Positions 37,057 through 59,565 of a DNA stretch of 64,000 nucleotides are shown here, one piece after another; within the stretch, counting starts at the first letter, position 1, and each line of letters begins with the position of its first letter. The position numbers were made by a program, and so were the translations under genes. Location of the stretch: the IMG/VR virus record IMGVR_UViG_3300029908_000004, positions 1 through 64,000 of that record. One strand, 5' to 3'. The notes beneath the pieces were generated by a model. The model searched no databases, was not told the origin of the DNA, and saw nothing but the letters and a program-made list of their open reading frames with translations.

Positions 37057-37191
37057 GGATATAGTTTGAACAAGATGTTTTTCGATGCTACCATTACACC
37101 AAGCTGGCATAAATTATTAAATGGTGCCAGCCCTGGGATTTGAACCCAGACCCGTTCGTTATGAGTGAAGATAACCTTGCTCTGTCGACCC
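37057..37191 (-). ncRNA. YrlA-like Y RNA 1 (permuted tRNA-like domain)
   Basis: GGGTCGA-N8-GGTTATC, then T arm CTGGG-TTCAAAT-CCCAG, acceptor GGCTGGC/GCCAGCT closed by a loop, D arm GTGT-AATGGTA-GCAT, and 3' CTTGTTCAAACTATATCC pairing with the 5' end. Confidence 0.85.
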
Positions 37192-37214
37192 GTATGATTT
37201 GAATTTAATGATGA

Positions 37215-37348
37215 GGATATGGGGTGGAATTGGGTAAGCCTTTCGGCTGACGGATGTTCTACCATTTGAACTACATCCACTCGATTGAATGGAAGATTGG
37301 ACTCGAACCAATAACATTCTGTTTGAGATAACCAATTTCTATCGACCC
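37215..37348 (-). ncRNA. YrlA-like Y RNA 2
   Basis: GGGTCGA-N8-GGTTATC; ATTGG-TTCGAGT-CCAAT; acceptor hairpin; GTTC-AAATGGTA-GAAC; 3' CCAATT...ATATCC. Confidence 0.85.
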
Positions 37349-37359
37349 TCATCTAATAC

Positions 37360-37824
37360 TTATTGTGTAGCTTCCTTTTCGTTCCTTGATGGTGAGGTGC
37401 ACTCCTTGCGCGTGTTGGCCACCATCTCCTCGTACATGTGACCAAGCTGCTCTGATTCTTGGGCATGAGCTTCTGCCACTTCATCTACCACTACAGCTTC
37501 TGCCTGTGGTTGAGTACGTGGTGTCTTCAGCCAAAGAAGAGCAGCTTCCTGCGTACGCTGTGGGAACTTATCGTAACACAAGATTGCAGAAAGGATATTT
37601 ACTTTGATATCCCCTTCAACCTTTACAGTATCAGAGAGCCAGCTACCATTGGTCAGTCTTGATACAGCGATATGACGCCCCAACTTCTTGTTGAAACAAT
37701 CCTTTGGGTTGTGTGTGGAAACGGCGAAGATAGCTTCGTCTTCGGTCTGGGTATAAGCAACGCAAGCAACGGGGAAGCGATTCTCGTTGCGAAGAGAAAA
37801 TACCTTTACTGTTGGTTCAGTCAT
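37360..37824 (-). CDS. Conserved phage hypothetical protein
   Basis: 154 aa with SD; FAVSTHNPKDCFNKKLGRHIA motif. Confidence 0.65.
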   Translation of the reverse strand: MTEPTVKVFSLRNENRFPVACVAYTQTEDEAIFAVSTHNPKDCFNKKLGRHIAVSRLTNGSWLSDTVKVEGDIKVNILSAILCYDKFPQRTQEAALLWLKTPRTQPQAEAVVVDEVAEAHAQESEQLGHMYEEMVANTRKECTSPSRNEKEATQ

Positions 37825-37846
37825 ACTACTTCTCCTTTGGGGTTAA

Positions 37847-37920
37847 TGGTGGGACTAGGAGGAGTCGGACCTCCCTCGACGAATTAAGAATCCGCTGCAT
37901 GGCCGATGTGCTATAATCCC
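37847..37920 (-). tRNA. tRNA-Lys(CTT)
   Basis: GCGGA-TT CTT AA-TTCGT; CCA. Confidence 0.85.
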
Positions 37921-38119
37921 TTATTGTTTAGTCCTGTACTGCTATCACGTATTCTAAGAGACCTATTAGATCCTGAGCTATGCTTTTTAGCATAGCGGCT
38001 CCAACAACATCTCCTTTTTCTCGTAAATGTTTATCTAACAGCTCAAATCCATTGACAAACATTTCCGCTTGAGCTTCTGCTTCTTCTTGGGTTAACTCTG
38101 GCATATCATATCCTTTGTA

Positions 38120-38197
38120 TGGTGGCTAGAGAGGGAGTTGAACCCCCGACACACGGATTTTCGGTCCGCTGCTCTACCGAGACTGAGCTATCTAGCC
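38120..38197 (-). tRNA. tRNA-Phe(GAA), C33 variant
   Basis: GCGGA-CC GAA AA-TCCGT; CCA. Confidence 0.9.
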
Positions 38198-38380
38198 ATA
38201 TTTAAACTACGATTTTCTGTTAAGGAATCGTTCTAACACTACGAAAATAATGAACATAACTAATACTAAAACAATAGTCATAATTACCTTTATGTATTAA
38301 GTCTTATGTTGTAGTAGTTATAGTACAGATTCTGGATGGGCCTGAGGTCTAGAATTTATAACTACAACTACTACAAGCTC

Positions 38381-38899
38381 TTACAAGCTCTGGCGTTGGG
38401 AGATAGGTACTGCTGAGTTACATAACCACAAAGGTAAGTAGTCTGTTATACCTACTAGCCTAGAACTTTCTATTGGTTCTGTACAAATAGCTGTTAGTAC
38501 TAGTCCATCTATTCCATATATCTTCGGATTCTGATCATGGAAGGCATGGATAGGTATAAAAGCTTTGTTTAATAATGTTACTACATGCCATAGTTCATCA
38601 CTATTTCTGGCACCTAGTATCACTGTTGTAATAGGTATTATATCATCGGCCCTAGAGAATTTCATTAAACTAATAAGTCCTGGAGCGATACCCTTCTTCT
38701 TTCCCTTAGTTCTAGCATTATGTTCTTGAACTCTATCTAGGGAAACTCTCATCTTAGATACGACATGAGCTACTTGAGCAGCCGCTCTACCCCAATCTTG
38801 AGGTATGGTTCTACGAATTCTACGTGTAGTAAGGTGAGAAAATATTTCTACTTGTACTGTCTCAGCAACCACTACTACTATTCTTTTCTCTTCTGTCAT
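38381..38899 (-). CDS. Peptidyl-tRNA hydrolase PTH2-like protein
   Basis: GRAAAQVAHV...VILGARNSDEL...HAFHDQN...LTAI...P...ITDYLPLW. Confidence 0.75.
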   Translation of the reverse strand: MTEEKRIVVVVAETVQVEIFSHLTTRRIRRTIPQDWGRAAAQVAHVVSKMRVSLDRVQEHNARTKGKKKGIAPGLISLMKFSRADDIIPITTVILGARNSDELWHVVTLLNKAFIPIHAFHDQNPKIYGIDGLVLTAICTEPIESSRLVGITDYLPLWLCNSAVPISQRQSL

Positions 38900-38901
38900 A
38901 T

Positions 38902-39111
38902 CTAATCCTTGAAGGAAGAAGGAGAGTCAGATATTATTATTTCTGTTGGTGGTTCTACAGGATAAGCATTTACCGCGTCAAGAATAAACTTCATTACATG
39001 ACTACGATCACAGGCAAGTCCAACTGGTTCTCCATCGGCTGAAATGATTTCCATTCCTTCTTGCTTCCATGGTCGTGGTGGTACCTTAGGTAGTCGTATT
39101 GTTCTACTCAT
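38902..39111 (-). CDS. Hypothetical protein
   Basis: 69-aa ORF. Confidence 0.5.
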   Translation of the reverse strand: MSRTIRLPKVPPRPWKQEGMEIISADGEPVGLACDRSHVMKFILDAVNAYPVEPPTEIIISDSPSSFKD

Positions 39112-39127
39112 AAATCCTTTGAAGTAA

Positions 39128-39156
39128 TGGCGGTAGAGAGGAGAGTCGAACTCCTA
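39128..39156 (-). pseudogene. Orphan tRNA 3' end (Ser-like, G73)
   Basis: TTAGGAGTTCGACTCTCCTCTCTACCGCCA, just downstream of tRNA-Ser(TGA). Confidence 0.6.
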
Positions 39157-39181
39157 AGTCCGGTTAGGGTACTATAGTTTA

Positions 39182-39274
39182 TGGAGGAAGCGGTCCGATT
39201 CAAACGGACGGACCCCATCATTGGGCATCGGAAGTTTTCAGGACTTCTGCATTAGTTCGCTCTGCCACGCTTCC
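39182..39274 (-). tRNA. tRNA-Ser(TGA), C33 variant
   Basis: GAAGT-CC TGA AA-ACTTC; long variable arm; CCA. Confidence 0.87.
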
Positions 39275-39397
39275 AATAACCGGTAACCTCTGTTTCTAAC
39301 TGAAAATTGGACCCCTCAGTTATGCGTCGGACTAGCTAGAACGAGTTGATGCTACGCCCCATCACCGGTTACTACAACAACTCTAATTACTTATAAT

Positions 39398-39485
39398 TGG
39401 AGGAAGGAGAGGGAGTCAGACTCTCAAGTCCCTTACGGGCACCCTGAGTTTCTAGCTCAGTTGGCTTATCGATGCCTACCCTTCC
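39398..39485 (-). tRNA. tRNA-Ser(AGA)-like, degenerate D and T loops
   Basis: CTGAG-CT AGA AA-CTCAG; long variable arm; GGAAGGG/TCCTTCC-T-CCA. Confidence 0.6.
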
Positions 39486-39859
39486 TTTAATTCTAATTTC
39501 TTACAATTACATTCATTACATGCAGAATTATCATAATTATGAGACCAATAGAAATGTCCACAAATACATGTGTCTATTCCTATTGACATGAATGGTGTTA
39601 TTTGATGAAGAAGCACTTGATCTTGTTTCAAGAACCTATATAGAGAAGATCGCTTCTCTGTTCGACATCTTTTTGCATTAGGATTAAGTATTGTATGCAT
39701 CAAATCTAACAAATCTAATCCTAATGTTCTAGAACCACAGAACTTTTTATCCTTACTAACTTTCTTTAACAAGTGTAAGGCTAAAGTATCCCTGTCCTCT
39801 TGTGGTAATTGTATACGCTTCTGACTATAAAAATTCGCTAATATCTCTAATCTTTTCAT
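39476..39859 (-). CDS. Hypothetical protein (paralog of the ORF at 40414)
   Basis: LALHLL...TILNP...LKQDQVLLHQITPF...CICGH. Confidence 0.6.
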   Translation of the reverse strand: MKRLEILANFYSQKRIQLPQEDRDTLALHLLKKVSKDKKFCGSRTLGLDLLDLMHTILNPNAKRCRTEKRSSLYRFLKQDQVLLHQITPFMSIGIDTCICGHFYWSHNYDNSACNECNCKKLELKEG

Positions 39860-40167
39860 GGTGTTATAGATGTTATCTTTGGTAGAGTTGGTAGTTCTCT
39901 AGGTGATAGTGTTGGTAAACAAGGTTCATGTAATACTAATGTGGGCTGGATAAGGAGCGTCTTGTTCTTAGAGAATCGTTTGTAATATTCGATCCAAATA
40001 GCAGCATCCTGATTGGAACTTTCTAAAGCTGCATCCCAAACAAGGCTACATTCAGCCCAATGTCCGTGCCCAACGAACCCTGTGACACCTTCCATCCAAA
40101 CCACTCTGCACTTATTTTTGGCGAACGCAGAAGAACATAGTAGAAGTATAATTAATAGTTTTTTCAT
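39856..40167 (-). CDS. Secreted hypothetical protein
   Basis: Signal peptide MKKLLIILLLCSSAFA. Confidence 0.6.
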   Translation of the reverse strand: MKKLLIILLLCSSAFAKNKCRVVWMEGVTGFVGHGHWAECSLVWDAALESSNQDAAIWIEYYKRFSKNKTLLIQPTLVLHEPCLPTLSPRELPTLPKITSITP

Positions 40168-40493
40168 TTACTAGACCCTATCTTACAATCACAACCAAAT
40201 GTTTCTGGTTGTGATACCTCAGTTATGAAGCGGTCTGGGGCTCTTCTTGGTTTATCACATACCGAACAAACTTTTCCTGCTCCACAACAATCCTCGCAGG
40301 TAGTGGTCTTACCATGACAGTAGACACACACTTTTGTTGGTGGGAGTAACACGTCTAACTCATCTACTTGAATGGCAAGATTATCCAAAGTAATCCATTC
40401 ATTTTTGTCGTAGTTAGCAGGCCTCTCTGATGTACACCCACGAGCTTTCCCCCATAGATGTACTACTAAGCTGTGCATACTTTGTTTGTTCAT
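40164..40493 (-). CDS. Cys-rich hypothetical protein
   Basis: CVYCHG...CEDCCGAGKVCSVC. Confidence 0.55.
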   Translation of the reverse strand: MNKQSMHSLVVHLWGKARGCTSERPANYDKNEWITLDNLAIQVDELDVLLPPTKVCVYCHGKTTTCEDCCGAGKVCSVCDKPRRAPDRFITEVSQPETFGCDCKIGSSK

Positions 40494-40926
40494 GAGGTTT
40501 CTCCCTAGAACCCAGACTTGATTTTGAGCTCTTCACACTTACCCTTGGCTTTACCGCGTGTTCACAACCAGTGCACTTCCATTTTTTACCTATGTAATCA
40601 TGATTAAAGGATATATGCCCACATTCACAATATGGATCGTAATCACATATGAAAGGGCTTAGTTGTCCTAATAACACTGGGTCGTCTTTCTTTAGCTGAC
40701 GGATAAAGTTAGATTGTTTAAATAATAAAACTTTACTCTGTGTTGGATCTAGTATAGCCCTCGTCGTCTCTGCTAAGTCTTTTATAGAGGCGTTGGTGTC
40801 CCAGATATGCTCGTTGGTTAAAGACCACTTGAACAAGAATAACGCTAAGGCTTCCCTAAGTGCAGTGTCCATTACTATAGTCTGTTTACTATAGTCTTCC
40901 ATAATTTGTTGATATTTAGATTTCAT
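40414..40926 (-). CDS. Hypothetical protein (paralog of the ORF at 39476)
   Basis: ALALFL...AILDP...LKKDDPVLLGQLSPF...CECGH. Confidence 0.6.
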   Translation of the reverse strand: MKSKYQQIMEDYSKQTIVMDTALREALALFLFKWSLTNEHIWDTNASIKDLAETTRAILDPTQSKVLLFKQSNFIRQLKKDDPVLLGQLSPFICDYDPYCECGHISFNHDYIGKKWKCTGCEHAVKPRVSVKSSKSSLGSREKPHEQTKYAQLSSTSMGESSWVYIREAC

Positions 40927-40936
40927 AATATATGTT

Positions 40937-40966
40937 TGGAGCTATCGAAGAGTCTCGAACTCTTGA
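40937..40966 (-). pseudogene. Degenerate tRNA 3' part
   Basis: AAGAG-TTCGAGA-CTCTT-CGATAGC-T-CCA with no matching 5' acceptor or D arm. Confidence 0.5.
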
Positions 40967-41006
40967 GTTTTATTTGTAGATTAAAATTGTAGCTGAACTC
41001 CCTCAA

Positions 41007-41270
41007 CTATAAAACCATTATCTTGTCACATTCAGCTTTGTTCTTTTCTTCTTTTAGTCTTGCATCTTCTACAAGGAATGGAAGATATAATCGTTCGGCA
41101 TATTCTAGCTTAGCATTTAGCTGGGCTATTTTGTAGTTGTACGCCTCTACTTCAAGGATATCCGGGCCTACTACACTCCATGCACTAGGATTATATAATT
41201 CTCTTATTTCTTTACGACAGTTAACTATCGTTGTTCCTAATTCTTTTCTTATTGATTCAAGTGTCCACAT
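41007..41270 (-). CDS. Hypothetical protein
   Basis: 87-aa ORF. Confidence 0.55.
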   Translation of the reverse strand: MWTLESIRKELGTTIVNCRKEIRELYNPSAWSVVGPDILEVEAYNYKIAQLNAKLEYAERLYLPFLVEDARLKEEKNKAECDKIMVL

Positions 41271-41277
41271 ATATGTA

Positions 41278-41301
41278 TGGAGCTGAGAGTCGTGATTGAA
41301 C
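41278..41301 (-). pseudogene. Orphan tRNA 3' end (Thr-like)
   Basis: GTTCAATCACGACTCTCAGCTCCA, downstream of tRNA-Thr. Confidence 0.55.
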
Positions 41302-41319
41302 GGACGCTAGCTTATAAGT

Positions 41320-41394
41320 TGGAGCTACCAGAGAGATTTGAACTCCCGATTGACTGATTACAGATCAGTTGCTGTTCCACTGAGCCATGGTAGC
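41320..41394 (-). tRNA. tRNA-Thr(TGT), C33 variant
   Basis: ACTGA-TC TGT AA-TCAGT; GCTACCA/TGGTAGC-T-CCA. Confidence 0.82.
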
Positions 41395-41426
41395 TAATAA
41401 GACTTTCCTTTTGGTGACCGGTGGGT

Positions 41427-41448: not shown

Positions 41449-41488
41449 TTGACACTTTCGACTAAGTTATTCTATACTATATAGTTAT

Positions 41489-42154
41489 ATGATAACCCTA
41501 AGTATGGAACAATTTACCAAACTAAATAGTCGCTCACCAGTAGAATGTAAATGTGAACAATGTAACAGTCTTTTCTACAGAGTAAAACATGATTTACAGA
41601 CAGCTATTCGTAGGAAAGAACCAATATCATTTTGTTCGCCGAAGTGTTATGGTTTATACAGAAACACTAAGACTACTGTCAAATGTTTATGGTGTAAGTC
41701 TGAAGTAGTTAGAATACCAACTACTAAGAATGTCTTCTGTTCGAGATCGTGTTCTGCAAAATATAATAACACACATAAAACATTTGGGACTAGAAGATCG
41801 AAACTTGAGAGATTTCTAGAAGAACAAATAAAATTATCGTACCCCAATTTGGAGCTTATATGCAATAGCAAATCAGTCATCGGTTCAGAGTTAGATTTCT
41901 ATTTCCCGAGGCTCAGATTGGCGATAGAACTCAATGGTATTCTGCACTACGAACCAATCTATGGGACAGATAAATTCTCTAAAATTGTTGACAATGATAG
42001 ACAAAAAGTTAGATTATGTGAAGCTATGGGTATTGAGCTAGCAGTTATTAATTCTTCGTCATGTTCACGCATGAGCGCAGTATTTAAAACTAAGTATTTG
42101 GGGATAACACGTGAATTAATAGACTCTGTTATTGATAGAGGAAATTTGGGGTAG
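41489..42154 (+). mobile_element. Antisense PD-(D/E)XK/Vsr-like homing endonuclease gene with zinc fingers (HEG4)
   Basis: ELDFYFPRLRLAIELNGILHY; CSPKC/CSRSC repeats; TTGACA-18nt-TATACT promoter at 41449-41478. Confidence 0.8.
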
Positions 42155-42221
42155 ATAGAGAGGTTCAAACTCTCGCTAAGGGAGCCACAGACCCTCGTGC
42201 TTTCATTACACTATACCTACC
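42147..42221 (-). tRNA. tRNA-His(GTG), replacement copy
   Basis: G-1:C73; AGGGT-CT GTG GC-TCCCT; CCA. Confidence 0.88.
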
Positions 42222-42288: not shown

Positions 42289-43393
42289 TTAATATTTTGA
42301 AAGTTGTTCCATATTTCTATGTACTATTGACTTATTTGTTAGTTTAACATAACAGTAACCCGGATTACTGGAATAGTACATAACCTTACCTACCCGACCC
42401 CTCAGATTATCATTGTCACCTATGAGTATTACGTCATCACTAATATTTAGCTTGGGGAGTATTGGATTAGTCCAAATTATTATACGATCAATGTTATACC
42501 TTTTTGGCAATGGAACTCAAATATTCTATACAATCTTTGTCAAGTTCTACTGCGTATTGATAAGCAAACAAAGCTAATACGTGGGACAGCCTTTGTTCAT
42601 TATCAGTCCCTTCATGTCTTATAACTAAATCCCTTATACCGCCTCGCTTTAAGAAAGATTCTGCTTCTTTTATTAACTTACCTTCTAAAACTGTGGTAGG
42701 AAATGGTTCGCCTAGTCTCCACATATCTATCCTATATTCTCTCCAGAAATTCTTCTGGGACACAATATACCTTTGAATTAAAGAATGCATCATAGTACTC
42801 AACATAATAGTTACAATTTAAGTTGATTGGACCATTGTATGTAGGAGAGTAGGTACGAGAACATATAATCTTTACTAGTGAGTGTGATGGTATTTGTGTA
42901 TATCCTGTTTTCGTTAACGCGAAGGCACCATAACGAAAGGGTTCAGGCTTGATTAATATACATATCCTATCCATGGCACGCCCTCTCTAACTGTTCAGCC
43001 GCCACCAAGAGACACCTTCCTGTCCGTAATTCTTCAATCAAGAAAAGAATATTACTAATACTATCATTGAGGGGAAATTGTACTATAAAAATACTGCCTT
43101 TATTAGGTCCACTTATAAAAGTTACTGCTTCTCCAGCTTCCAGTTTGGTAGGTCTTGGACCATTATATAAACAAATTCTATCCATATCACAATCTTTCTA
43201 TATACTTAGATGGAATAATATACCTCTGGCCATTTCTTATGATTTCACAGCATTCATCATTTAAATATATGAGGCCCTTTAGATAAATGTCTGTTATTAC
43301 CCCAGTAAATTCATAGCCAGATCCTGCTCGTACGTTTACTCTAAGACCAACTTCAAGATTCTTCGGTATATGCCAGATACACATACGGTCCAT
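42289..43393 (-). other. Tandem array of small DRIC/DRMC-motif paralogs (42289-42510, 42732-42974, 42967-43185, 43187-43393) plus an unrelated ORF at 42494-42805
   Basis: N-termini IDRIIIW, MDRICIL, MDRICLY and MDRMCIW; SH3/KOW-like beta pattern; ends E(Q)LS/LERI/LERA/IERL. Confidence 0.65.
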
Positions 43394-48929: not shown

Positions 48930-49260
48930 AGGTAGACCCTAACCCGGTTAATCAACTAAGAAGATTAACAATACGCTGGGGCAGAAACACTGGCTAGGCT
49001 GGAAATCATCCAGGCTGGCAGAGTGTCGATACCAACAGCGTTTACGTTAACAGTTTTGCCTGTTATTGTTGTATAGTCGTTTAACGTGAGCCTATAGCAC
49101 GACCTGTCATTATTTGCAATTCATACCAAGCGAACCCGGGAGCGGCCCCTATGGTGGACACTCGGGATTCAACCTCCGTGCCCTTATAATTGGTGGACCG
49201 CGAGGGAGTTGAACCCTCGTTAATGGTCATGCTTACAAATAAATCATACAGGTTTAACCG
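48930..49260 (-). ncRNA. ssrA: Circularly permuted two-piece tmRNA
   Basis: The acceptor piece (49260-49191: T arm GAGGG-TTCAACT-CCCTC, GCGGTCC-A-CCA) precedes the coding piece starting GGGCCGC at 49148 (G3:U70). Helix 2 TTGCAAATAA/TTATTTGTAA; pk1-like element; AATAACA-GGC resume context; tag ORF 49060-48965. Confidence 0.85.
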
Positions 49261-49938: not shown

Positions 49939-49950
49939 AAAATCTTAGGT

Positions 49951-50213
49951 GGATATAATTGGAATTGGATATTTCGGATATCTTAGTCCAGCAAACATCA
50001 CCAGCGTCAAATATCCTACACCTTTATGTGGTCAAAGGTAACCGCACTGACTTCTCAATACTAGTAGTGTCTTAACCAGACACAGGCTTATAACTATTTA
50101 ACCTCTGTGTTTGCTATTCTTTCAAATAGCTCTTCTCTATCAGAGAAGGTTTAATTGTCCCCGAGGTAACGGGTACTTGCACGGTTATAGAGATAACCAA
50201 GTTCCGGCGACCC
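49951..50213 (-). ncRNA. Long Y-RNA-family member (about 263 nt)
   Basis: GGGTCGC-N8-GGTTATC at the 5' end; GGAACTTGG pairs with the 3' CCAATTCC; ends TATATCC; several internal hairpins. Confidence 0.65.
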
Positions 50214-50223
50214 ACCAAAGGTC

Positions 50224-50667: not shown

Positions 50668-50709
50668 ATGTAGCTCCTTTTAATGTTTGGAACTATTTAT
50701 TCATCTCTC

Positions 50710-50784
50710 GGATATGGATTGACAAAGGTATTGCCTGCACGCAGGCTGTCATTTTAATTGTAGATAACCTTTATACTTCGACCC
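50710..50784 (-). ncRNA. Short Y-RNA-family member
   Basis: GGGTCGA-N8-GGTTATC...CCTTTGTCAATCCATATCC; ends pair. Confidence 0.8.
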
Positions 50785-50802
50785 GAGATTCTTTGTTGCT
50801 TA

Positions 50803-50904
50803 AGATGTAGATTGATAAGGGAATGCCTTTTCCCGAGATGGATCCGGGAACCACTGTAGGCAACAGCTAGCTTGCGCTTTTAGATAACCCTTGTCGTTCG
50901 ACCC
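50803..50904 (-). ncRNA. Y-RNA-family member
   Basis: GGGTCGA-N8-GGTTATC...CCCTTATCAATCTACATCT. Confidence 0.8.
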
Positions 50905-50926
50905 TAAGCGGAATTTATATTGTTAT

Positions 50927-51026
50927 GGATATGGATTGATAAGGTTATGCCTTATTTGGGTATCGAAACCCGCTGCAGGCGACAGTTAGACTTTCGTCCA
51001 TCCAGATAATCCTCGTCGGTCGACCC
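50927..51026 (-). ncRNA. Y-RNA-family member with a T-loop-like hairpin
   Basis: GGGTCGA-N8-GATTATC...GGGTTTCGATACCC...CCTTATCAATCCATATCC. Confidence 0.8.
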
Positions 51027-51044
51027 ATAACAAAGTTGTTAAAA

Positions 51045-51368: not shown

Positions 51369-51899
51369 ATGCCAATTCGTAACTGTTTATATTGTAACAA
51401 ACTATTTGATGCTCCACAACGTGATATTACCAGAGGTAATGGTAAATACTGTTCCAGGAAATGCTCTGGAAACTATAAGAGCTCTCTTCCTAGTAAAGCT
51501 CCTATTATAGAGCTTACTTGTGCTTATTGTAATAGTACATTTACTAAGCCTTCCAGATACGTTAGAAAAGCCAATTCTAGAAGCGGATTGCGCTTTTGTA
51601 ACCGTAAGTGTAAAGAACTTGGACAGCGATTAGACGGTGGTAACATAAAAGCTATACAACCATCTCATTTTGGCACAGGTACCGGAGAACACCATTATAG
51701 AGCAAAAGCTCTAAACGCATTCCCAAATAAGTGTAATAGATGTGGATATGATGAATTAATAGGGATCCTTGTTGTACACCACAAGGATCGTAACCGTTCC
51801 AATTCTCATCTATCAAACTTAGAGATTCTGTGCCCAAATTGTCACGCTAAAGAACATTACATTAATCACGATGGATCGTATAGCTCAAAGAGAAAATGA
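51369..51899 (+). mobile_element. Antisense HNH homing endonuclease gene (HEG6)
   Basis: CNRCG...VHHKDRNRSNSHLSNLEILCPNCHAKEH; CSRKC repeats; promoter motif at 51256-51266. Confidence 0.9.
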
Positions 51900-51900
51900 T

Positions 51901-54974: not shown

Positions 54975-55373
54975 CTATCCATCTATGTTAGTGTTTTGTT
55001 TCTTCTTCCAGTCACGTATTGCAGCCGCTATCGCGTCTTGGGCAAGAACCGAGCAATGAATCTTGACCGGAGGCAGTGACAGCTCTTTCACTATGTCGGT
55101 GTTCTTGATCTGCAGAGCCTCGTCCACCGTCTTGCCTTTTACCCACTCGGTCGCCAGCGATGACGATGCGATCGCCGAGCCGCAGCCGAACGTCTTGAAC
55201 TTCGCGTCCTCGATGATCCTGGTCTGCGGGTTTACCCGGATTTGCAGCTTCATGACGTCGCCGCATTCCGGAGCGCCGACCAGCCCGGTGCCAACCTCAT
55301 CTGCATTCTTGTCCATGGTGCCGACGTTGCGCGGATTGGTGTAGTGATCCAGTACCTTATCGCTGTAAGCCAT
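54975..55373 (-). CDS. iscU: Fe-S cluster scaffold protein IscU/NifU
   Basis: YSDKVLDHYTNPRNVG...GAPECGDVMKLQI...KFKTFGCGSAIASSS...LPPVKIHCSVLA. Confidence 0.97.
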   Translation of the reverse strand: MAYSDKVLDHYTNPRNVGTMDKNADEVGTGLVGAPECGDVMKLQIRVNPQTRIIEDAKFKTFGCGSAIASSSLATEWVKGKTVDEALQIKNTDIVKELSLPPVKIHCSVLAQDAIAAAIRDWKKKQNTNIDG

Positions 55374-56067
55374 CCATCTCCTCTACTTGTTGCAAAACAC
55401 TTCTTACCTTGTTTATATCTAAGCTACTATCATCTTCAGTTCTAACTCTACGCTGCATGTCGATCCAATATGGAGCACGGCAAACGTCATTAATTCTTGA
55501 GATCTCTTCCTTCACGTTATCTGGTCCTAATCCACCAGCAAACCCTATCGGGAATGCAAACGTTGGTGACGGCCATTTGTCTGGGATGATACCCCTTCCA
55601 CCGGATTTGTCAAATAATCCTTGAGCTCTGAATCCACAAGATTTCAGTGCATAAGGTAGTAGGTTATTTACCCCGTCCAACTGAAAGATAAACTTTTTCT
55701 GACTAAGCTCCTTAAGTCTGTTTACCATACTAAATGTGGAACTGTGTGTTTCGCTGTGAGTGTTAATCTGAATTCTATCGCTTATATTAACACAAGCAGG
55801 TAGAGCTGTCCAGTCTAACTCACCAATCAGTAATTCTTTAACCCATGCACCACAGATATGTGTAGCTACCTGAAGTTCATTTATCTCAGCAGCTTTGGAG
55901 AATTGTGATATCCAATGATTGAATGGAAATCTAGGCTCACCGAAGTGGTCTCTAGATACTAAGATCCCCCATTCTACGAATGGGAACTCTTTACTAAGCT
56001 CAACCAGATCGTTGATATTGGTAGCATCATCAGCTCCAGTGATTGTTACTGTGTGTGGATAAAACAT
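55357..56067 (-). CDS. TIM-barrel protein (phosphoribosylanthranilate isomerase-like)
   Basis: VTITGADD...VEWGIL...LFDKSGGRG...GFAGGLGPDNV...YWIDM; start placed at MFYPH. Confidence 0.65.
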   Translation of the reverse strand: MFYPHTVTITGADDATNINDLVELSKEFPFVEWGILVSRDHFGEPRFPFNHWISQFSKAAEINELQVATHICGAWVKELLIGELDWTALPACVNISDRIQINTHSETHSSTFSMVNRLKELSQKKFIFQLDGVNNLLPYALKSCGFRAQGLFDKSGGRGIIPDKWPSPTFAFPIGFAGGLGPDNVKEEISRINDVCRAPYWIDMQRRVRTEDDSSLDINKVRSVLQQVEEMDGLQR

Positions 56068-56116
56068 AAACTCCTTTGTTTGGCATGGGCACGAGGGCGG
56101 AGATAGAACTAAGTTT

Positions 56117-56143
56117 TGGCACCAGATGGAAGAATCGGACTCC
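56117..56143 (-). pseudogene. Orphan tRNA 3' end (Trp-like)
   Basis: GGAGTCCGATTCTTCCATCTGGTGCCA, downstream of tRNA-Trp. Confidence 0.55.
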
Positions 56144-56166
56144 TGAGTCCTGATACTTAAATTCTT

Positions 56167-56240
56167 TGGCACAAGCACCAGGATTTGAACCCGTACGAAC
56201 TGTTTTGGAGACAGTCATGCTACCGTTACATCATGCTTAT
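56167..56240 (-). tRNA. tRNA-Trp(CCA)
   Basis: ACTGT-CT CCA AA-ACAGT; G73; CCA. Confidence 0.92.
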
Positions 56241-56282
56241 GCGATAGCCTTTTACTACATGGAAAGGCCTTCCATGTCCATA

Positions 56283-56603
56283 TTACTTCTTAAACAGTCT
56301 TTCTAATTCTCTTACATCCGGGTTAATAGGCTCTGGTTCATCCATGTTGTCATCATCATCATCATCATCGTCATCGTCATCATTGTCAAAGTATCGGTCG
56401 TAGACATATACTTGACAATTACACCTTGTAAGTGCATTTTCCATTACACAACAACCATGTTTACCTTCAGTGTGACGACATCTGAAGTGCCCACATTGAC
56501 ATACACCCGGTTTGAGTCTCAAGAGTTCTTTTATAAGTAATAATATAACAATAATCATCATTATTGCTACTACAATGATAAACAACTGAGTTATCAAGGT
56601 CAT
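56283..56603 (-). CDS. Membrane-anchored protein with a Cys/His motif and a poly-Asp tract
   Basis: Transmembrane helix, CQCGH..C.H, and a long Asp run encoded by GAT/GAC repeats. Confidence 0.65.
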   Translation of the reverse strand: MTLITQLFIIVVAIMMIIVILLLIKELLRLKPGVCQCGHFRCRHTEGKHGCCVMENALTRCNCQVYVYDRYFDNDDDDDDDDDDDNMDEPEPINPDVRELERLFKK

Positions 56604-56621
56604 AATAGCCTCTCTTTACAT

Positions 56622-56696
56622 TGGTACGCCGTGAGAGATTTGAACTCCCAACCTCTTGCTTGTAACGCAAATACTCTACCATTGAGCTAACGGCGT
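56622..56696 (-). tRNA. tRNA-Val(TAC)
   Basis: TTGC-GT TAC AA-GCAA; CCA. Confidence 0.9.
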
Positions 56697-56698
56697 AT

Positions 56699-56956
56699 TT
56701 ATTGTATCTCGTTATCGGTTATGTGGATCTTGCCTTTTTCCGTTGGTTCCACTCGGATATGTGGTTTGATGTAGCTTTTATCAATCAGTCCATTATTTAA
56801 CAGTGTAACATGAATTCTCATGTTATCTTGGATTACATCCGTTAGAACGTCATTCTGTACGATTACTGCTTCGTTTAAGTTACGAAGGGTAAGGTATTGT
56901 GAGATATTAATTAAAGCTAACCCAATCATTGAAATGATCATAATTCTCTTTGCCAT
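56699..56956 (-). CDS. Membrane-anchored hypothetical protein
   Basis: N-terminal hydrophobic segment. Confidence 0.55.
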   Translation of the reverse strand: MAKRIMIISMIGLALINISQYLTLRNLNEAVIVQNDVLTDVIQDNMRIHVTLLNNGLIDKSYIKPHIRVEPTEKGKIHITDNEIQ

Positions 56957-56986
56957 TACCCTACCCTTCTTTCTTAAGAGGCGGAT

Positions 56987-58687
56987 TTACTCCGCTTCTG
57001 CTTCTTCAGTTTCCAATACTTCCGTTTTCCCTGAAACGAATTGGGCAATCAACGAAGGCACATTGGTATCGAATCCAACCACGTCCAACGAACGTACATC
57101 GTTTGGATCTGCGATCGAGAATCCAGTTGCTGTCATCCCGATGACAATCTGATGAGCGTTACGTCCAGAACTCTGACGATAGCTCTCCAAAGCGCTAAAT
57201 ACGTGTTTAGGTCCTGCCCAAGTCTCGTTGTCAGTGATGTTGACAAACACATCGACTGGCATCTTCTTTTCTTGTGCATCCTTATATGGAAGTGAACAAT
57301 CTGTTCCTCCCCACCCTGTGCGTAGTGCCTTGGATATTGCTGCGTCTAGCTTCATGGATTTAACCAATCCAACATCAATCATCTTGGTGTTGTAGGAAGC
57401 AACGTGATGCCATGGCTCATTATGCATGATTACCATAGCCATTGCTACTGCACCCATGATTGGTGACATGTTTGGACAACCAACAAGATTTCCCCATCCC
57501 ATTGAGCCGGAACAATCCAAGCCAATGTAATAGTTCAAATTGGTGGTTTCAGCATTCTTAAACGTCTTATAGAACGCTGCGTCCATAGCATCCAAAACTG
57601 GTTTCACCACTGTCCAAGTCAACGAGCCACGAATGCCATGACCAGTTTGATAGGTTAACATAGCATTCAGAACAGTTAGTGGGTGAACACGACTACGTTG
57701 CAGATATTCCTGATCCGACAGACGTGTTACTACTAGCTTTGACGCCTCTGATAGAGGAGCTAACAGCTTGATGCTACTCATCTTACCAAGGTTCCTGATC
57801 ATTGCGTTCATGGGCATTTTCTGAAGCAATGCCTCCCAAACTGCAACGTGGTTCAATGCCTCTGTAGGGATCATTTCGCGAGTGAGGTTGTACTTCTGAA
57901 TCGCTGAAATGATTACCTTTGGGTCTTTTTCATTCTTCATTGCCTCGAACTGCTTAATCAGTTCTGGCAAGTCCTTCTCTAAATCGGTTGCTCCGTGCAG
58001 ACCTTTGGTAGCCCAATCAAACAAGGCTTTCTGCCCATTCGACAACGTAGCATGGGTACCTGCATGGGTGGCACGAAGGATGTCGCGATGGCTCCATCCT
58101 TGTGTTCCATCCACACGCCGTGATTGGTATTTCACCATCTGATAAGCCAGTTTCTGCTCATCTTTCTGTGTGTACCAATCTGCTACGCCGTTGCGTAGTG
58201 ACCTATTCCAACGCATCTTTGCGGCACCTTCGGCCTGTTTTGACCGCATGCCTTTCAGATATTCCATTAGTTGGAACAAATGCGTTCCGATACGTGCTAC
58301 GTCTGGCAGTTTATCCAAGGCGTAACCACGAGTGGATTTGTCACCGAATGCTATACACTGTGCCAACGCGAACAGGGCATAGTCATTCTTTGGAGCCCGG
58401 CCAGATACAGAGATATCGACAATCGTTTTTACTGTCTTCTCTCCATCTGCCGAAATACAGCGTTCAACGCACTTTGCGTTGTCACGCGTCAACTTGTCGG
58501 CACCAACATAATAAGTGCCACCTTCGCTTCCAAGAATTATAAATCTCTGGAGTCGGTCCCAGTCACTCAGTTCAAAAACATAACCTCCAGCGTTATTCTG
58601 AACTTGATTCTTTTCTGGGAATGGTTCACTTTGAGGAATTGTTGGCTTCATCGCCCCATACACATTTGTTAGGTTGGGTTTCTTCAT
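56987..58687 (-). CDS. rsr: Ro60/Rsr TROVE-domain RNA-binding protein with a vWA domain
   Basis: QVQNNAGGYVF...DRLQRFIILGSEGGTYY...KYQSR..GWSHRDILRATH...MIRNLGKMS...SRVHPL...LDCSGSM...GGTDCSLP...TDNETW...VVGFDTNVP. Confidence 0.96.
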   Translation of the reverse strand: MKKPNLTNVYGAMKPTIPQSEPFPEKNQVQNNAGGYVFELSDWDRLQRFIILGSEGGTYYVGADKLTRDNAKCVERCISADGEKTVKTIVDISVSGRAPKNDYALFALAQCIAFGDKSTRGYALDKLPDVARIGTHLFQLMEYLKGMRSKQAEGAAKMRWNRSLRNGVADWYTQKDEQKLAYQMVKYQSRRVDGTQGWSHRDILRATHAGTHATLSNGQKALFDWATKGLHGATDLEKDLPELIKQFEAMKNEKDPKVIISAIQKYNLTREMIPTEALNHVAVWEALLQKMPMNAMIRNLGKMSSIKLLAPLSEASKLVVTRLSDQEYLQRSRVHPLTVLNAMLTYQTGHGIRGSLTWTVVKPVLDAMDAAFYKTFKNAETTNLNYYIGLDCSGSMGWGNLVGCPNMSPIMGAVAMAMVIMHNEPWHHVASYNTKMIDVGLVKSMKLDAAISKALRTGWGGTDCSLPYKDAQEKKMPVDVFVNITDNETWAGPKHVFSALESYRQSSGRNAHQIVIGMTATGFSIADPNDVRSLDVVGFDTNVPSLIAQFVSGKTEVLETEEAEAE

Positions 58688-58771
58688 TTTCTTTTGACCT
58701 CTTACGAGACTACCAAGATAATCTGGCTTCTCGCATCCTTTATATTTGCTTTGGAGATTTTGGTTTACCCT

Positions 58772-58930
58772 TTAAGAACGATTTTCTTTGGTGAGCAGCT
58801 GGGCAACCGTTTCCAGTGAATTGAAGCTTGGGACGTGGGCGTCTGGAGGCGCTGGGTGCAAACCCTTTGCCACAGCCGTCATCTCCTCACGCAACGATTT
58901 CAGCGATTGAATTTTCAACTTGCTCGTCAT
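58772..58930 (-). pseudogene. Truncated bacterial HTH regulator (HVO_A0114/MarR-like N-terminus)
   Basis: MTSKLKIQSLKSLREEMTAVAKGLHPAPPDAHVPSFNSLETVAQLLTKENRS*; stops before the HTH. Confidence 0.5.
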
Positions 58931-58940
58931 CCTACACCCC

Positions 58941-58993
58941 GGATATGATGTTGCATAGGGTTTGTTGTCAAGGTAACCCTACGCGTTCGACCC
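58941..58993 (-). ncRNA. Minimal Y-RNA-family member (53 nt)
   Basis: GGGTCGA-N8-GGTTACC...CCCTATGCAACATCATATCC. Confidence 0.75.
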
Positions 58994-59014
58994 GTGGTCG
59001 AATTTTGTTGCTAT

Positions 59015-59076
59015 GGATATAATACGATTGAAGGCGTTTTTATCTGCAATGATTGATAACCTTCATTCTTCGACCC
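59015..59076 (-). ncRNA. Minimal Y-RNA-family member
   Basis: GGGTCGA-N8-GGTTATC...CCTTCAATCGTATTATATCC. Confidence 0.75.
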
Positions 59077-59096
59077 ATAGCCGATATTAATAGAGT

Positions 59097-59164
59097 GGAT
59101 ATAAACAACTTTGCTGGGATATTGTTTAAATTAGCAGTTTAAGGTAACCCAACGATCTCGACCC
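59097..59164 (-). ncRNA. Minimal Y-RNA-family member
   Basis: GGGTCGA-N8-GGTTACC...CCCAGCAAAGTTGTTTATATCC. Confidence 0.75.
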
Positions 59165-59331
59165 ACTCCATGATTTGATGGTGGAAAGAGGTATTGTATG
59201 TTTGGCCCAACACCGGCCTAGATATATCCGCAGTGCTGGTTTCCTCTCTTACAAATTACCTAGTTCTAGGCACCAAATAACCGTAAGCCACCAAACTTTA
59301 TTACTTCGTTTCAAAATCTTTAATATCTAGT

Positions 59332-59452
59332 AGATATAAATTTGACTGGATGTTTTAGAGTGTCCTGCCAATTAGACGATGCCGGTTACCCGGTAGAGAG
59401 ATTCGAACTCCCATAACCCGCTCCATAGGCGATAACCCAATCGGGTCGACCC
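59332..59452 (-). ncRNA. YrlA-like Y RNA 3
   Basis: GGGTCGA-N8-GGTTATC; GGGAG-TTCGAAT-CTCTC; acceptor hairpin ACCGG-GTAA-CCGG; D arm GTCT-AATTGGC-AGGAC; 3' ATATCT. Confidence 0.85.
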
Positions 59453-59502
59453 ACTAGATAAATTCATTTGCTCCCTAGGAGCGCTTTACATTCTTATGGT
59501 GT

Positions 59503-59565
59503 GGATATAAACAACTTAGTCAGGAAGTTTATCAAAGTAATAAGGTAATCCTAACTATTCGACCC
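59503..59565 (-). ncRNA. Minimal Y-RNA-family member
   Basis: GGGTCGA-N8-GATTACC...CCTGACTAAGTTGTTTATATCC; shares its 3' 17 nt with the 59097 copy. Confidence 0.75.

What the first reader, a model, noticed from the sequence alone, without database searches (positions are those of the whole stretch)
37057..59565. Phage Ro60 with an expanded family of 11 Y-RNA-like genes
Seen: eleven minus-strand noncoding elements (37057, 37215, 49951, 50710, 50803, 50927, 58941, 59015, 59097, 59332, 59503) share GGGUCG(A/C)-N8-GRUUAYC at the 5' end with invariant 8-nt spacing. Their 3' ends pair back to the 5' end and finish in AUAUCC-like sequence. Internal loops are unrelated and lengths run from 53 to about 263 nt. 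Five lie directly upstream of the Ro60 gene. Known: Ro60/Rsr binds a bulged helix at the base of Y RNAs (5' strand GGUCCGA in animals), and bacterial Y RNAs tether Ro60 to effectors such as PNPase; usually only one or a few Y RNAs occur per genome. Inference: this is a modular set of Ro60 RNPs in which one docking helix carries many different effector or decoy domains.
Basis: partly seen in the sequence, partly recalled or inferred. Interest (0 to 1): 0.9.

Follow-up and report, generated by a model that had tools for sequence, protein, structure and literature searches.

The report
Eleven Y-RNA-like genes beside phage Ro60
An uncultivated jumbo phage carries a Ro60 gene plus eleven small structured RNA genes that share one Ro60-type docking stem but have different tips. 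This is a large example of a known RNA-protein partnership, and similar arrays occur next to Ro60 in many other phages and bacteria.

Summary
The motif GGGTCGM-N8-GRTTAYC occurs 11 times, all on the minus strand, against 0.01 expected. Each copy is the 5' half of a structured RNA whose 3' end (AUAUCC-like) pairs back to it. Two helices show strong compensatory variation.

The shared stem carries the published hallmarks of bacterial Y-RNA-like RNAs (GNCGA(A) and YUAY). Three members carry a YrlA-type permuted tRNA-like module. An intact Ro60 gene (TROVE plus vWA domains) lies about 250 nt downstream of five of them.

A covariance model built only from other viral contigs recovers exactly these 11 (33-55 bits; the next hit scores 9.8). 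The same model gives 151 hits in 84 viral loci (77 from a Ro60 search) and 109 hits in Ro60 loci from genome assemblies. Every hit is on the Ro60 strand.

Eleven copies is at the top of the range but not unique. I saw 12 in one viral contig, 6-9 in several others, 8 in a Chloroflexota genome assembly and 3 in mycobacteriophage Catera.

Ro60 binding, expression and distinct effector roles for the variable modules remain untested. Verdict: real and correctly interpreted, a new variant of a known kind.

The parts
37210..37353 (-). E1: Y-RNA-like gene, YrlA type. It has the docking stem, a T arm, a closed 7-bp acceptor-like hairpin and a D arm.
   Evidence: Scores 70.2 bits with R1 and 49.7 bits with R2. 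The tRNA-like part hits Rfam YrlA below threshold (26.6 bits, E 0.0011). It carries the T-loop motif.
37051..37197 (-). E2: Y-RNA-like gene, YrlA type. It has a 7-bp acceptor stem followed by an encoded A-CCA and a 13-nt linker. It starts 12 nt after E1 ends.
   Evidence: Scores 68.9 bits with R1 and 46.5 bits with R2. The fold has z -4.8. Sequence was read; T-loop motif.
49944..50220 (-). E6: Y-RNA-like gene with a multi-hairpin module of about 230 nt. Its motif variant is GUCGCC. Its 3' end lies 5 nt before tRNA-Asp (49938-49864).
   Evidence: Scores 57.2 bits with R1 and 37.0 bits with R2. The fold has z -3.8 and keeps the shared P1/P2 base.
50706..50788 (-). E5: Y-RNA-like gene whose module holds a single G+C-rich hairpin.
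   Evidence: Scores 64.3 bits with R1 and 54.7 bits with R2. Fold.
50798..50909 (-). E4: Y-RNA-like gene with a three-hairpin module, paralogous to E3. A 9-nt spacer separates it from E5.
   Evidence: Scores 82.4 bits with R1 and 49.1 bits with R2. Fold; sequence.
50920..51033 (-). E3: Y-RNA-like gene with a three-hairpin module. A 10-nt spacer separates it from E4.
   Evidence: Scores 86.3 bits with R1 and 44.7 bits with R2. The fold has z -3.3.
58935..59000 (-). E11: minimal Y-RNA-like gene (YrlB-like, docking stem plus a 12-nt loop). It is the copy closest to Ro60.
   Evidence: Scores 52.8 bits with R1 and 43.5 bits with R2. Fold.
59010..59081 (-). E10: minimal Y-RNA-like gene.
   Evidence: Scores 53.2 bits with R1 and 47.3 bits with R2. 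The fold has z -4.0.
59092..59169 (-). E9: minimal Y-RNA-like gene. Its 3' strand is nearly identical to that of E7.
   Evidence: Scores 42.4 bits with R1 and 39.4 bits with R2. Fold.
59326..59458 (-). E8: Y-RNA-like gene, YrlA type, with a T arm, a short acceptor-like hairpin and a D arm.
   Evidence: Scores 66.1 bits with R1 and 43.8 bits with R2. Its ortholog at L201:5915-6049 has compensatory changes in the T arm, acceptor-like hairpin and D arm. T-loop motif.
59498..59570 (-). E7: minimal Y-RNA-like gene. It starts 6 nt after the stop codon of a small hydrophobic ORF.
   Evidence: Scores 42.0 bits with R1 and 33.0 bits with R2. It gives a weak Rfam YrlB alignment over the same bounds (16.6 bits).
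56987..58687 (-). Ro60/Rsr ortholog of 566 aa, the presumed protein partner of the eleven RNAs.
   Evidence: Pfam TROVE (E 1.3e-39) and vWA_Ro60 (E 2.3e-47). Full-length matches to solved Ro60/Rsr chains 9nen, 1yvp and 2nvo (E 7e-109 to 1e-95). The DxSxS metal-site residues are invariant in alignment A3.
59172..59300 (-). Conserved structured stretch between E8 and E9 that lacks the docking motif. It is not a family member and its role is unknown.
   Evidence: Conserved against L201:6058-6196, with some compensatory pairs. No Rfam match.

Best explanation
These are eleven genes for Y-RNA-like noncoding RNAs of the bacterial YrlA/YrlB lineage, encoded by an uncultivated jumbo phage (a 215-kb contig) that also encodes Ro60.

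Every copy has the same base. Helix P1 is a variable 4-7 bp stem followed by the conserved GGGU:AUCC pairs, including a G.U wobble that is invariant in the window. Next comes an asymmetric internal loop with CGA(A) on the 5' side and UCAAUC-like sequence on the 3' side. Then comes a covarying helix P2 that ends in GG:CC, followed by UUAYC, which opens the distal module. This much is shown by sequence and covariation.

The base is the docking site for the phage Ro60 ring. This is inferred from two things: the match to the published GNCGAA/YUAY signature, and the strict same-strand linkage of this RNA family to Ro60 genes elsewhere.

The distal modules differ. Three are permuted tRNA-like domains; one of them has a 7-bp acceptor stem and an encoded ACCA, which predicts RNase P nicking as reported for M. 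smegmatis YrlA. Two are paralogous three-hairpin modules. One is a single hairpin. Four are bare A/U-rich loops. One is a multi-hairpin module of about 230 nt.

The genes sit in the phage tRNA island in head-to-tail runs with 9-12 nt spacers, and one ends 5 nt before tRNA-Asp. They are therefore probably cut out of polycistronic tRNA-type precursors (inferred).

The most likely function is that each RNA links or gates Ro60 towards a different partner or substrate. A candidate is host PNPase or another exoribonuclease, as shown for D. radiodurans and for Thermus phage phiLo. That would reshape RNA decay, RNA quality control or counter-defence during infection (inferred).
For: Eleven exact motif hits, all on one strand, against 0.01 expected.

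All ten folded copies, and E6, adopt the same P1/P2 base.

Covariation within the window: 91.5% of cells are paired against 65% after shuffling. There are 42 double-change cells against 13.7. The covariation score is 0.686 against 0.2 or less for slid partners. Across 105 distinct sequences from 36 sources (the window plus 35 viral loci): 94% paired, score 0.825 against 0.21, and the G.U pair is kept in 99 of 105.

The GNCGAA(N0-1)G and YUAY signatures of YrlA/YrlB come from PMC4201824. The CGAA motif of the Ro60-bound Yrl1 and Yrl2 of phage phiLo comes from PMC12135203.

The tRNA-like modules are supported by a sub-threshold YrlA hit, by T-loop motifs, and by alignment with the element upstream of Ro in mycobacteriophage Catera, with covarying T arms.

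Ro60 is intact.

Model R2, built only from other contigs, finds exactly these 11.

Ro60 linkage: 57/57, 151/151 and 109/109 model hits lie on the Ro60 strand, mostly within about 2.5 kb of the gene. Loci found from the motif alone also carry Ro60 just downstream of the array.

A syntenic relative (Ro60 72% identical) keeps the array between tRNA-Asn and Ro60. It shows compensatory changes, including GAGG:CUUC in place of GGGU:AUCC.
Against: There is no expression or binding data for this phage.

The Rfam YrlA, YrlB and Y_RNA models do not reach their gathering scores. They also miss the Catera locus, so this mostly reflects narrow models.

Six of the eleven copies lie 6-21 kb from Ro60.

Only 5 of 11 have the full GNCGAA, and E6 has GUCGCC.

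No PNPase, RtcB or other known Ro60 partner gene was found in the window.

The pair counts were made on alignments fitted to the model. That inflates them somewhat, although the MAFFT-only alignment gives the same helices.

Distinct effector roles for the modules are conjecture.
Confidence: 0.8

Rival explanations
1. The RNAs are Ro60-bound Y RNAs, but the copies are functionally redundant. Under this view they serve dosage, or they gate the Ro60 cavity. The different modules would be mainly nuclease-resistant caps that drifted after tandem duplication, not adaptors for different partners.
For: There are recent paralog pairs: E3/E4, and E7/E9 with near-identical 3' strands. Four members have only short A/U-rich loops. 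Chen et al. discuss a protective role for the tRNA-like fold. Copy number varies widely between related loci, for example 4 in L201 against 5 at the same site here.
Against: The module classes recur across distant phages. Lengths are bimodal (about 65-75 nt and about 115-150 nt) in the arrays. The tRNA-like module keeps its structure through compensatory changes between orthologs, which argues for selection on the modules themselves.
Confidence: 0.3
2. The RNAs act mainly without the phage Ro60. They could be decoys or sponges for host tRNA-binding or tRNA-modifying enzymes, for host Rsr, or for tRNA-directed defence systems. The tRNA-like and CCA-bearing members would mimic tRNA acceptor ends.
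For: Three members mimic the upper half of tRNA, and one encodes ACCA. The elements are embedded in a 28-tRNA island that also holds several other CCA-ending tRNA-like minihelices. A Ro60-like phage protein is reported to counter the Ppl defence system (PMC11482910).
Against: The feature conserved across all members, and across about 260 hits elsewhere, is the Ro60-type stem rather than the tRNA-like part. That stem is strictly linked to Ro60 genes. The members lack anticodon loops, so they cannot be decoys for anticodon nucleases.
Confidence: 0.1
3. The motif is a DNA-level signal: a phage promoter, a protein-binding repeat, or the ends of a small mobile element.
For: The 22-nt 5' block is highly conserved and strand-specific. 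The elements have short terminal inverted repeats.
Against: The terminal stems differ in sequence between copies yet always stay complementary. There are 42 double changes in the window and 542 across phages. The conserved 5' and 3' blocks are not inverted copies of each other and sit 53-263 nt apart around unrelated inserts. There is no excess of sigma-70-like promoters. No transposase or target-site duplication was seen.
Confidence: 0.02
4. The elements are processing punctuation, or decayed tRNA genes of the tRNA island, with no function beyond guiding RNase cleavage of the polycistronic transcripts.
For: Packing is tight, with 5-12 nt spacers between the elements and next to tRNAs, both here and in L023, L040, L016 and L090.
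Against: Eight of the eleven have no tRNA-like part. The family also occurs in tandem next to Ro60 in loci where no tRNA gene (L065, L034, L025) or only one (L101) was found. The internal-loop sequences are conserved on both strands across phyla (R2 consensus).
Confidence: 0.05

Closest known systems
YrlA and YrlB of Salmonella Typhimurium and Mycobacterium smegmatis (Chen et al. 2013, 2014; PMC4201824)
   Same: They are encoded beside Ro60/Rsr on the same strand. Their 5' and 3' ends pair. They have a GNCGAA-type motif near the 5' end and a YUAY that opens the distal module. YrlA has a permuted tRNA-like domain (T arm, acceptor-like hairpin, D arm), and YrlB is a shorter companion. In M. smegmatis both RNAs are cut from one precursor, and YrlA is nicked by RNase P and carries CCA. 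E2 here has the same 7-bp acceptor stem plus an encoded ACCA.
   Different: Two RNAs are described per locus in those species, against eleven here. The copies here sit at three sites spread over 22 kb of a tRNA island. There are extra module types (three-hairpin, single hairpin, a module of about 230 nt). Both strands of the internal loop, and a G.U pair, are conserved. The Rfam YrlA and YrlB gathering scores are not reached.
Y-RNA-like genes next to the Ro-like gene of cluster C mycobacteriophages (ET08 in Chen et al. 2014; Catera examined here)
   Same: This is a phage-encoded Ro60 with same-strand Y-like RNAs directly upstream. My model R2 finds three in the 485-nt gap upstream of Catera's Ro gene. 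The middle one aligns with E1, E2 and E8.
   Different: Catera has three copies at one site. Its Ro60 is only about 40% identical, and the phages are otherwise unrelated.
Thermus phage phiLo Ro60 with Yrl1 and Yrl2 (PMC12135203)
   Same: This is a phage Ro60 with upstream Y-RNA-like genes carrying a CGAA motif in an internal loop between two stems. Binding to the phage Ro60 and formation of a complex with host PNPase were shown experimentally. This makes it the best experimental model for what is proposed here.
   Different: phiLo has two RNAs and no tRNA-like module is described for them. Nothing has been tested experimentally for the present phage.
Deinococcus radiodurans Rsr with Yrn1/Yrn2 and PNPase (the RYPER complex)
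   Same: The logic is modular: one end of the RNA docks on Ro60 and the other end tethers an effector, the exoribonuclease PNPase.
   Different: Yrn1 keeps the animal-type bulged helix on both strands, and its tRNA-like parts are arranged differently. The present family belongs to the YrlA/YrlB lineage.
Stem-bulge RNAs (sbRNAs) of nematodes, a multi-copy family homologous to Y RNAs (from my own knowledge; not checked here)
   Same: This is a precedent for expansion of the Y RNA family to a dozen or more paralogs in one genome.
   Different: It is eukaryotic and Pol III-transcribed. It is linked to DNA replication rather than clearly to Ro60. It has no tRNA-like modules and is not viral.

Membership tests
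Bacterial/phage Y-RNA-like RNAs (YrlA/YrlB lineage) | Encoded near a Ro60/Rsr gene and on the same strand | tested here: met
   E7-E11 lie 250-880 nt upstream of Ro60. E3-E6 lie about 6-9 kb from it and E1-E2 about 20 kb from it. All eleven are on the Ro60 strand. For the family as a whole, 151/151 viral hits and 109/109 hits in genome assemblies are on the Ro60 strand.
Bacterial/phage Y-RNA-like RNAs (YrlA/YrlB lineage) | GNCGAA(N0-1)G motif near the 5' end (Chen et al. 2014) | tested here: met
   GUCGA is present in 10 of 11 copies and the full GUCGAA in 5 of 11; E6 has GUCGCC. The consensus of the independent model R2 reads GGGUCGAA.
Bacterial/phage Y-RNA-like RNAs (YrlA/YrlB lineage) | Conserved YUAY opening the distal (V) region | tested here: met
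   UUAU or UUAC is present in 11 of 11 copies, at a fixed distance from the GNCGA motif.
Bacterial/phage Y-RNA-like RNAs (YrlA/YrlB lineage) | 5' and 3' ends pair into a stem that carries the protein-binding region | tested here: met
   Fifteen modelled pairs form two helices. In the window 91.5% of cells are paired, and 94% across 105 sequences, with strong compensatory variation against shuffled and slid controls.
YrlA subfamily | Permuted tRNA-like domain in the order T arm, acceptor-like hairpin, D arm | tested here: met
   Met for E1, E2 and E8 only. Evidence is the folds, T-loop motifs, a local YrlA hit on E1, and alignment with YrlA-type RNAs of other phages including Catera. The other eight copies lack this domain.
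Rfam RF02553 (YrlA) and RF02565 (YrlB) | Score at or above the family's gathering threshold | tested here: not met
   The best scores are 26.6 bits (threshold 69) for YrlA on E1 and 16.6 bits (threshold 97) for YrlB on E7. The same models give no hit at the Catera or Cashline Ro loci either, so they appear narrow.
Bacterial/phage Y-RNA-like RNAs (YrlA/YrlB lineage) | Bound and stabilised by Ro60, and accumulating as a discrete small RNA | not testable with these tools
   This needs RNA immunoprecipitation, gel-shift assays and Northern blots or small-RNA sequencing.
Animal-type Y RNA (Rfam RF00019) and D. radiodurans Yrn1 | Bulged helix with GGUCCGA on the 5' strand paired to a conserved 3' strand | tested here: not met
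   There is no Rfam Y_RNA match even at E up to 10 in the regions searched. The 5' strand here is GGGUCGA, without the extra C, and CGA(A) lies in an internal loop.
Ro60/Rsr protein | TROVE HEAT-repeat ring plus a vWA domain with a DxSxS metal site, full length | tested here: met
   Both Pfam domains are present. The protein aligns over residues 7-554 with solved Ro60/Rsr chains. D391, S393 and S395 are invariant in A3.
tRNA genes | Cloverleaf with an anticodon arm, detected by ARAGORN or by Rfam tRNA at threshold | tested here: not met
   None of the 11 elements is called as a tRNA. Only partial sub-threshold tRNA alignments appear, over the T and D arms of E1 and E2.

The most novel reading that the evidence does not exclude
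The phage uses Ro60 as a single hub that is reprogrammed by a library of at least eleven adaptor RNAs. Each adaptor would direct the ring to a different host or phage partner: exoribonucleases, tRNA-processing or tRNA-modifying enzymes, the ribosome, or a defence system. One adaptor may be nicked, end in CCA and possibly be aminoacylated. Because similar arrays of 4-12 RNAs flank Ro60 in many phages and bacteria, multi-adaptor Ro60 systems would be the rule rather than the exception, and would be an unrecognised layer of RNA control in phage-host conflict.
Probability: 0.3. Interest if true: 0.8.

Novelty: new variant of a known kind. Interest (0 to 1): 0.6.

Why it matters
In the papers I could read, Ro60 biology in bacteria and phages has been described with two Y RNAs per locus. 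What the variable end of a Y RNA does is still open, apart from the PNPase case. A single genome with eleven paralogs that keep one docking stem but carry at least five kinds of distal module is a natural experiment in adaptor diversity. It says which positions are needed for docking: the G.U pair, the CGA(A) loop, UCAAUC and UUAYC. It also offers a ready panel for pull-downs.

The survey done here suggests that large Y-RNA arrays beside Ro60 are widespread, in both viral contigs and genome assemblies. Existing Rfam models miss them. So Y RNAs are under-annotated, and a general stem-based model would recover many more.

Placement inside a phage tRNA island links Y RNAs to phage tRNA biology and possibly to counter-defence.

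Tried and rejected
A twelfth candidate at 42400 (2 mismatches) was rejected. It lies inside a 73-aa ORF, has no AUAUCC partner and gets no model score.

The Rfam gathering search gave only tRNAs. E-value searches gave one partial YrlA hit and one weak YrlB hit and nothing for the E3-E6 region.

Megablast of the locus against 50,697 phage records found no match. The DNA polymerase is 28% identical or less to any isolate, so neither host nor taxon could be assigned.

The closest Ro60 (P0002, 75% identical) has no retrievable DNA.

The script machine was lost, so boundaries and pairings were worked out by hand from the ruler output. No custom statistics or trees were made.

Alignment A4 (431 columns) was too wide to build a model. 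R2 was therefore built from A5, without the window, which doubles as an independent test.

The sigma-70 promoter and terminator scans were uninformative. Promoter-like sites were at or below shuffled levels in both scans; only the E3-E6 region had more terminator-like hairpins than its shuffles (6 against 1.2), and several of these lie inside the elements' own helices.

Pfam and PHROGs searches of about 45 neighbouring ORFs found no PNPase, RtcB/RtcA, RNA ligase, kinase or CCA-adding enzyme that could serve as a built-in partner.

A mobile-element reading was rejected because the terminal stems differ between copies and there is no transposase. A retron reading was rejected because the only reverse-transcriptase-like Pfam hit (RVT_3) is an RNase H protein.

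Four literature searches found no report of large Y-RNA arrays. The 2020 Annual Review by Sim et al. and the supplementary tables of Chen et al. 2014 were not available, so a published mention of high copy numbers cannot be excluded.

Full report
**1.

The pattern GGGTCGM-N8-GRTTAYC occurs exactly 11 times in the 64-kb window, always on the minus strand, against 0.01 expected from shuffles.

Nine of these read ATATCC, one ACATCT and one ATATCT. Core lengths run from 53 to 263 nt.

Relaxing to two mismatches adds one site, at 42400. It lies inside an ORF and has no 3' partner.

**2. The elements are structured RNAs, not DNA sites**

Outside the conserved GGGU...AUCC, each copy has a further 4-7 bp of complementary sequence that differs from copy to copy. 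Examples are UCAUAC/GUAUGA, UUGUUAU/AUAACAA and UCUAGU/ACUAGA.

The second half of the N8 spacer, together with the GG that follows it, pairs with a CC-containing 3' strand whose sequence also changes in step.

Single-sequence folds of ten copies, and of the 277-nt E6, give the same base architecture. In order:
- helix P1;
- an asymmetric internal loop with CGA(A);
- helix P2;
- UUAYC, which opens a variable distal module.

RNAalifold on a plain MAFFT alignment recovers both helices, with compensatory changes at 10 of 15 pairs.

On the model-based alignment of the eleven copies:
- 91.5% of cells are paired, against 65% after shuffling;
- 42 cells carry changes on both sides, against 13.7;
- the covariation score is 0.686, against 0.06-0.20 when the partners are slid.

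The alignment was fitted to the model, so these counts lean towards the structure. The MAFFT result agrees with them.

**3. They match the published definition of bacterial Y-RNA-like RNAs**

Chen et al. (PMC4201824) define YrlA and YrlB by four features. These are a GNCGAA(N0-1)G motif near the 5' end, a conserved YUAY that opens the V region, location beside Ro60 on the same strand, and (for YrlA) a permuted tRNA-like domain.

Here GUCGA is present in 10 of 11 copies, GUCGAA in 5 of 11, and UUAY in 11 of 11. The two Ro60-bound RNAs of Thermus phage phiLo were recognised by the same CGAA motif (PMC12135203).

E1, E2 and E8 contain a 5-bp stem with a UUCRANU loop (T arm), an acceptor-like hairpin and a D arm with the GG loop, in the YrlA order.
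- Rfam YrlA aligns locally to this part of E1 (26.6 bits, E 0.0011).
- All three align with YrlA-type elements of other phages, including the one upstream of the Ro-like gene of mycobacteriophage Catera, and the T arms covary.
- E2 has a 7-bp acceptor stem followed by an encoded A-CCA and a 13-nt linker. This is the arrangement that makes M. smegmatis YrlA an RNase P substrate carrying CCA.

The other eight copies fall into these groups:
- two paralogous three-hairpin RNAs (E3, E4);
- one single-hairpin RNA (E5);
- four minimal, YrlB-like RNAs of 65-78 nt (E7, E9, E10, E11);
- one RNA with a module of about 230 nt (E6).

No Rfam Y-RNA family reaches its gathering score. Those models also miss the Catera and Cashline loci, so this failure says little.

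**4. The protein partner is present and intact**

ORF 56987-58687 (minus strand, 566 aa) has TROVE and Ro60-vWA domains. It aligns end to end with solved human, Xenopus and Deinococcus Ro60/Rsr chains (E 7e-109 to 1e-95). It keeps the DxSxS metal-site residues.

Known phage Ro-like proteins, mostly from actinobacteriophages, are only about 40% identical.

**5. Independent test and survey**

Model R1 was built from the 11 copies. It found related elements in many viral contigs that had been picked up by the bare motif. I then built R2 from 92 of those elements, using no window sequence.

R2 recovers exactly the same 11 elements in the window, at 33-55 bits. With filters off, the next best hit scores 9.8 bits.

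I fetched 80 of 447 Ro60-encoding viral stretches and 80 of about 600 Ro60 loci from genome assemblies. R2 gave 151 hits in the 84 viral loci I scanned (77 of them from the set) and 109 in the genome-assembly loci. Every hit is on the Ro60 strand, and most lie within about 2.5 kb of the gene. The rest of each 20-kb locus, and the whole opposite strand, serve as an internal control with no hits. Of the 77 loci from the viral Ro60 search, 47 had at least one hit.

Loci chosen by the motif alone also turned out to carry Ro60 directly downstream of the array. This holds for L090, L048, L025, L074 and L083.

Across 105 distinct sequences, the two helices are 94% paired with a covariation score of 0.825 against 0.21. 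The G.U wobble in P1 is kept in 99 of 105.

**6. Eleven is high but not unique**

| Locus | Copies (E at or below 1e-3) |
|---|---|
| L139 (74-kb viral contig) | 12, in one tandem array upstream of Ro60 |
| This window | 11 |
| L090 (viral contig with a tRNA island like this one) | 8-9 |
| L209 (Aggregatilineales genome assembly) | 8 |
| L280 (Chloroflexota CFX5) | 7 |
| L065, L101, L034, L158, L136/L137 | 6-7 |
| L133 | 5 |
| Mycobacteriophage Catera | 3 |
| Gordonia phage Cashline | 2 |

The papers I could search describe two RNAs per locus, or three candidate regions in one phage. I found no report of large arrays. Some sources were not available to me.

**7. Genomic context**

The window equals the first 64 kb of a 215-kb IMG/VR contig. 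It contains a replication module followed by a tRNA island:
- split family-A polymerase, ribonucleotide reductase, clamp and clamp loader, ligase, RecD2-like helicase and UDG;
- 28 tRNA genes, all on the minus strand.

The Y-like genes sit inside this island at three sites. Within each site they run head to tail with short spacers: E1-E2 (12 nt), E3-E4-E5 (10 and 9 nt) and E9-E10-E11 (10 and 9 nt). E6 ends 5 nt before tRNA-Asp.

The same interleaving with tRNAs is seen in L090, L023, L040 and L016. This points to co-transcription and nucleolytic release, as reported for M. smegmatis YrlA and YrlB.

A relative with 72% identical Ro60 (L201) keeps the order tRNA-Asn, array, Ro60, tRNA-Val, tRNA-Trp. 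It has four family members. Two of them replace GGGU:AUCC by GAGG:CUUC. The ortholog of E8 changes both strands of its T arm, acceptor-like hairpin and D arm together.

**8. How it most likely works**

- *Shown:* a conserved, covarying docking stem; diverse distal modules; an intact Ro60 gene; and strict linkage between the RNA family and Ro60 genes.
- *Inferred from known systems:* Ro60 binds the stem through the CGA(A) region (Xenopus and Deinococcus data summarised; phiLo). The distal module engages a partner, such as PNPase in D. radiodurans, Salmonella and phiLo.
- *Conjecture:* the eleven modules address different partners or substrates, or some of them act as decoys.

Rival readings are scored in the Rival explanations section. 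They are redundancy or gating, Ro60-independent decoys, DNA sites, and processing punctuation.

**9. Novelty**

Phage Ro60 with Y-RNA-like genes is known, so this is not categorically new. Four things go beyond what I found described:
- the size of the family (11);
- its spread over three sites in a tRNA island;
- the breadth of module types;
- the finding that multi-copy arrays flank Ro60 widely in phages and bacteria and escape current Rfam models.

I rate it a new variant of a known kind, with interest 0.6.

Noticed in passing
window 26145-26230, 31140-31225, 33860-33895, 39115-39170, 49150-49240 (all minus strand): Five extra T-loop motifs (RGTTCRANTCY) lie outside every called tRNA and every Y-like gene. 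They sit in odd tRNA-like or minihelix-like sequences that end in an encoded CCA. One has a 7-bp acceptor stem and a T arm but no normal D or anticodon arm. Two adjacent ones near 49200 look like acceptor/T-arm minihelices. Two follow tRNA-Gln and tRNA-Ser directly.
   Followed up: partly
window 59172-59300 (minus strand); L201:6058-6196: A stretch of about 130 nt between E8 and E9 is conserved in the related phage. The shared sequence includes GAGGAAACC and GGGCCAAACAUACAAUACCUCU, and a few pairs are compensatory. It lacks the Ro60 docking motif and matches no Rfam family. It may be another noncoding RNA of the locus.
   Followed up: partly
window 42150-42220 (minus strand): Rfam calls a tRNA here (50 bits) that ARAGORN does not list. 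ARAGORN in turn lists several tRNAs that Rfam misses. No tRNA-His or tRNA-Met was called inside the window, and two tRNA-Met genes lie just beyond its end (L001:3321-3395 and 4580-4656).
   Followed up: no
L139:8188-8323 and L149:1820-1957: In two other viral contigs the Y-type docking stem encloses what looks like an unpermuted tRNA-like body: a D arm, then a hairpin in the anticodon-arm position, then a T arm. This differs from the permuted YrlA order.
   Followed up: no
L209 (Aggregatilineales genome assembly, 8.2-kb contig) and L280 (Chloroflexota CFX5): Ro60 loci binned as bacterial genomes carry 8 and 7 members of the same RNA family on both sides of Ro60. I did not check whether these contigs are prophages or mis-binned phage DNA.
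   Followed up: no
window 1247-2236 and 4251-5570 (minus strand), with ORFs 2226-2819, 3005-3454 and 3626-4261 between them: The family-A DNA polymerase is split into two ORFs about 2 kb apart (exonuclease plus N-terminal polymerase part, and C-terminal polymerase part). Three ORFs without Pfam matches lie between them.
   Followed up: partly
window 51369-51899 (plus strand): An HNH endonuclease ORF is one of the few plus-strand genes. It sits between tRNA-Ala and the E3-E5 array.
   Followed up: no
L201:5762-5914: Between two Y-like genes of the related phage there is a direct repeat of about 30 nt, of the form CAAGTTTCCA..CT....CAAG.GATGAC. It has no counterpart in the window.
   Followed up: no
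window 59576-59690 (minus strand): A very hydrophobic small ORF of about 35 aa ends 6 nt before E7. Another small ORF (58772-58930, 52 aa) separates E11 from Ro60. Neither has a family match.
   Followed up: no
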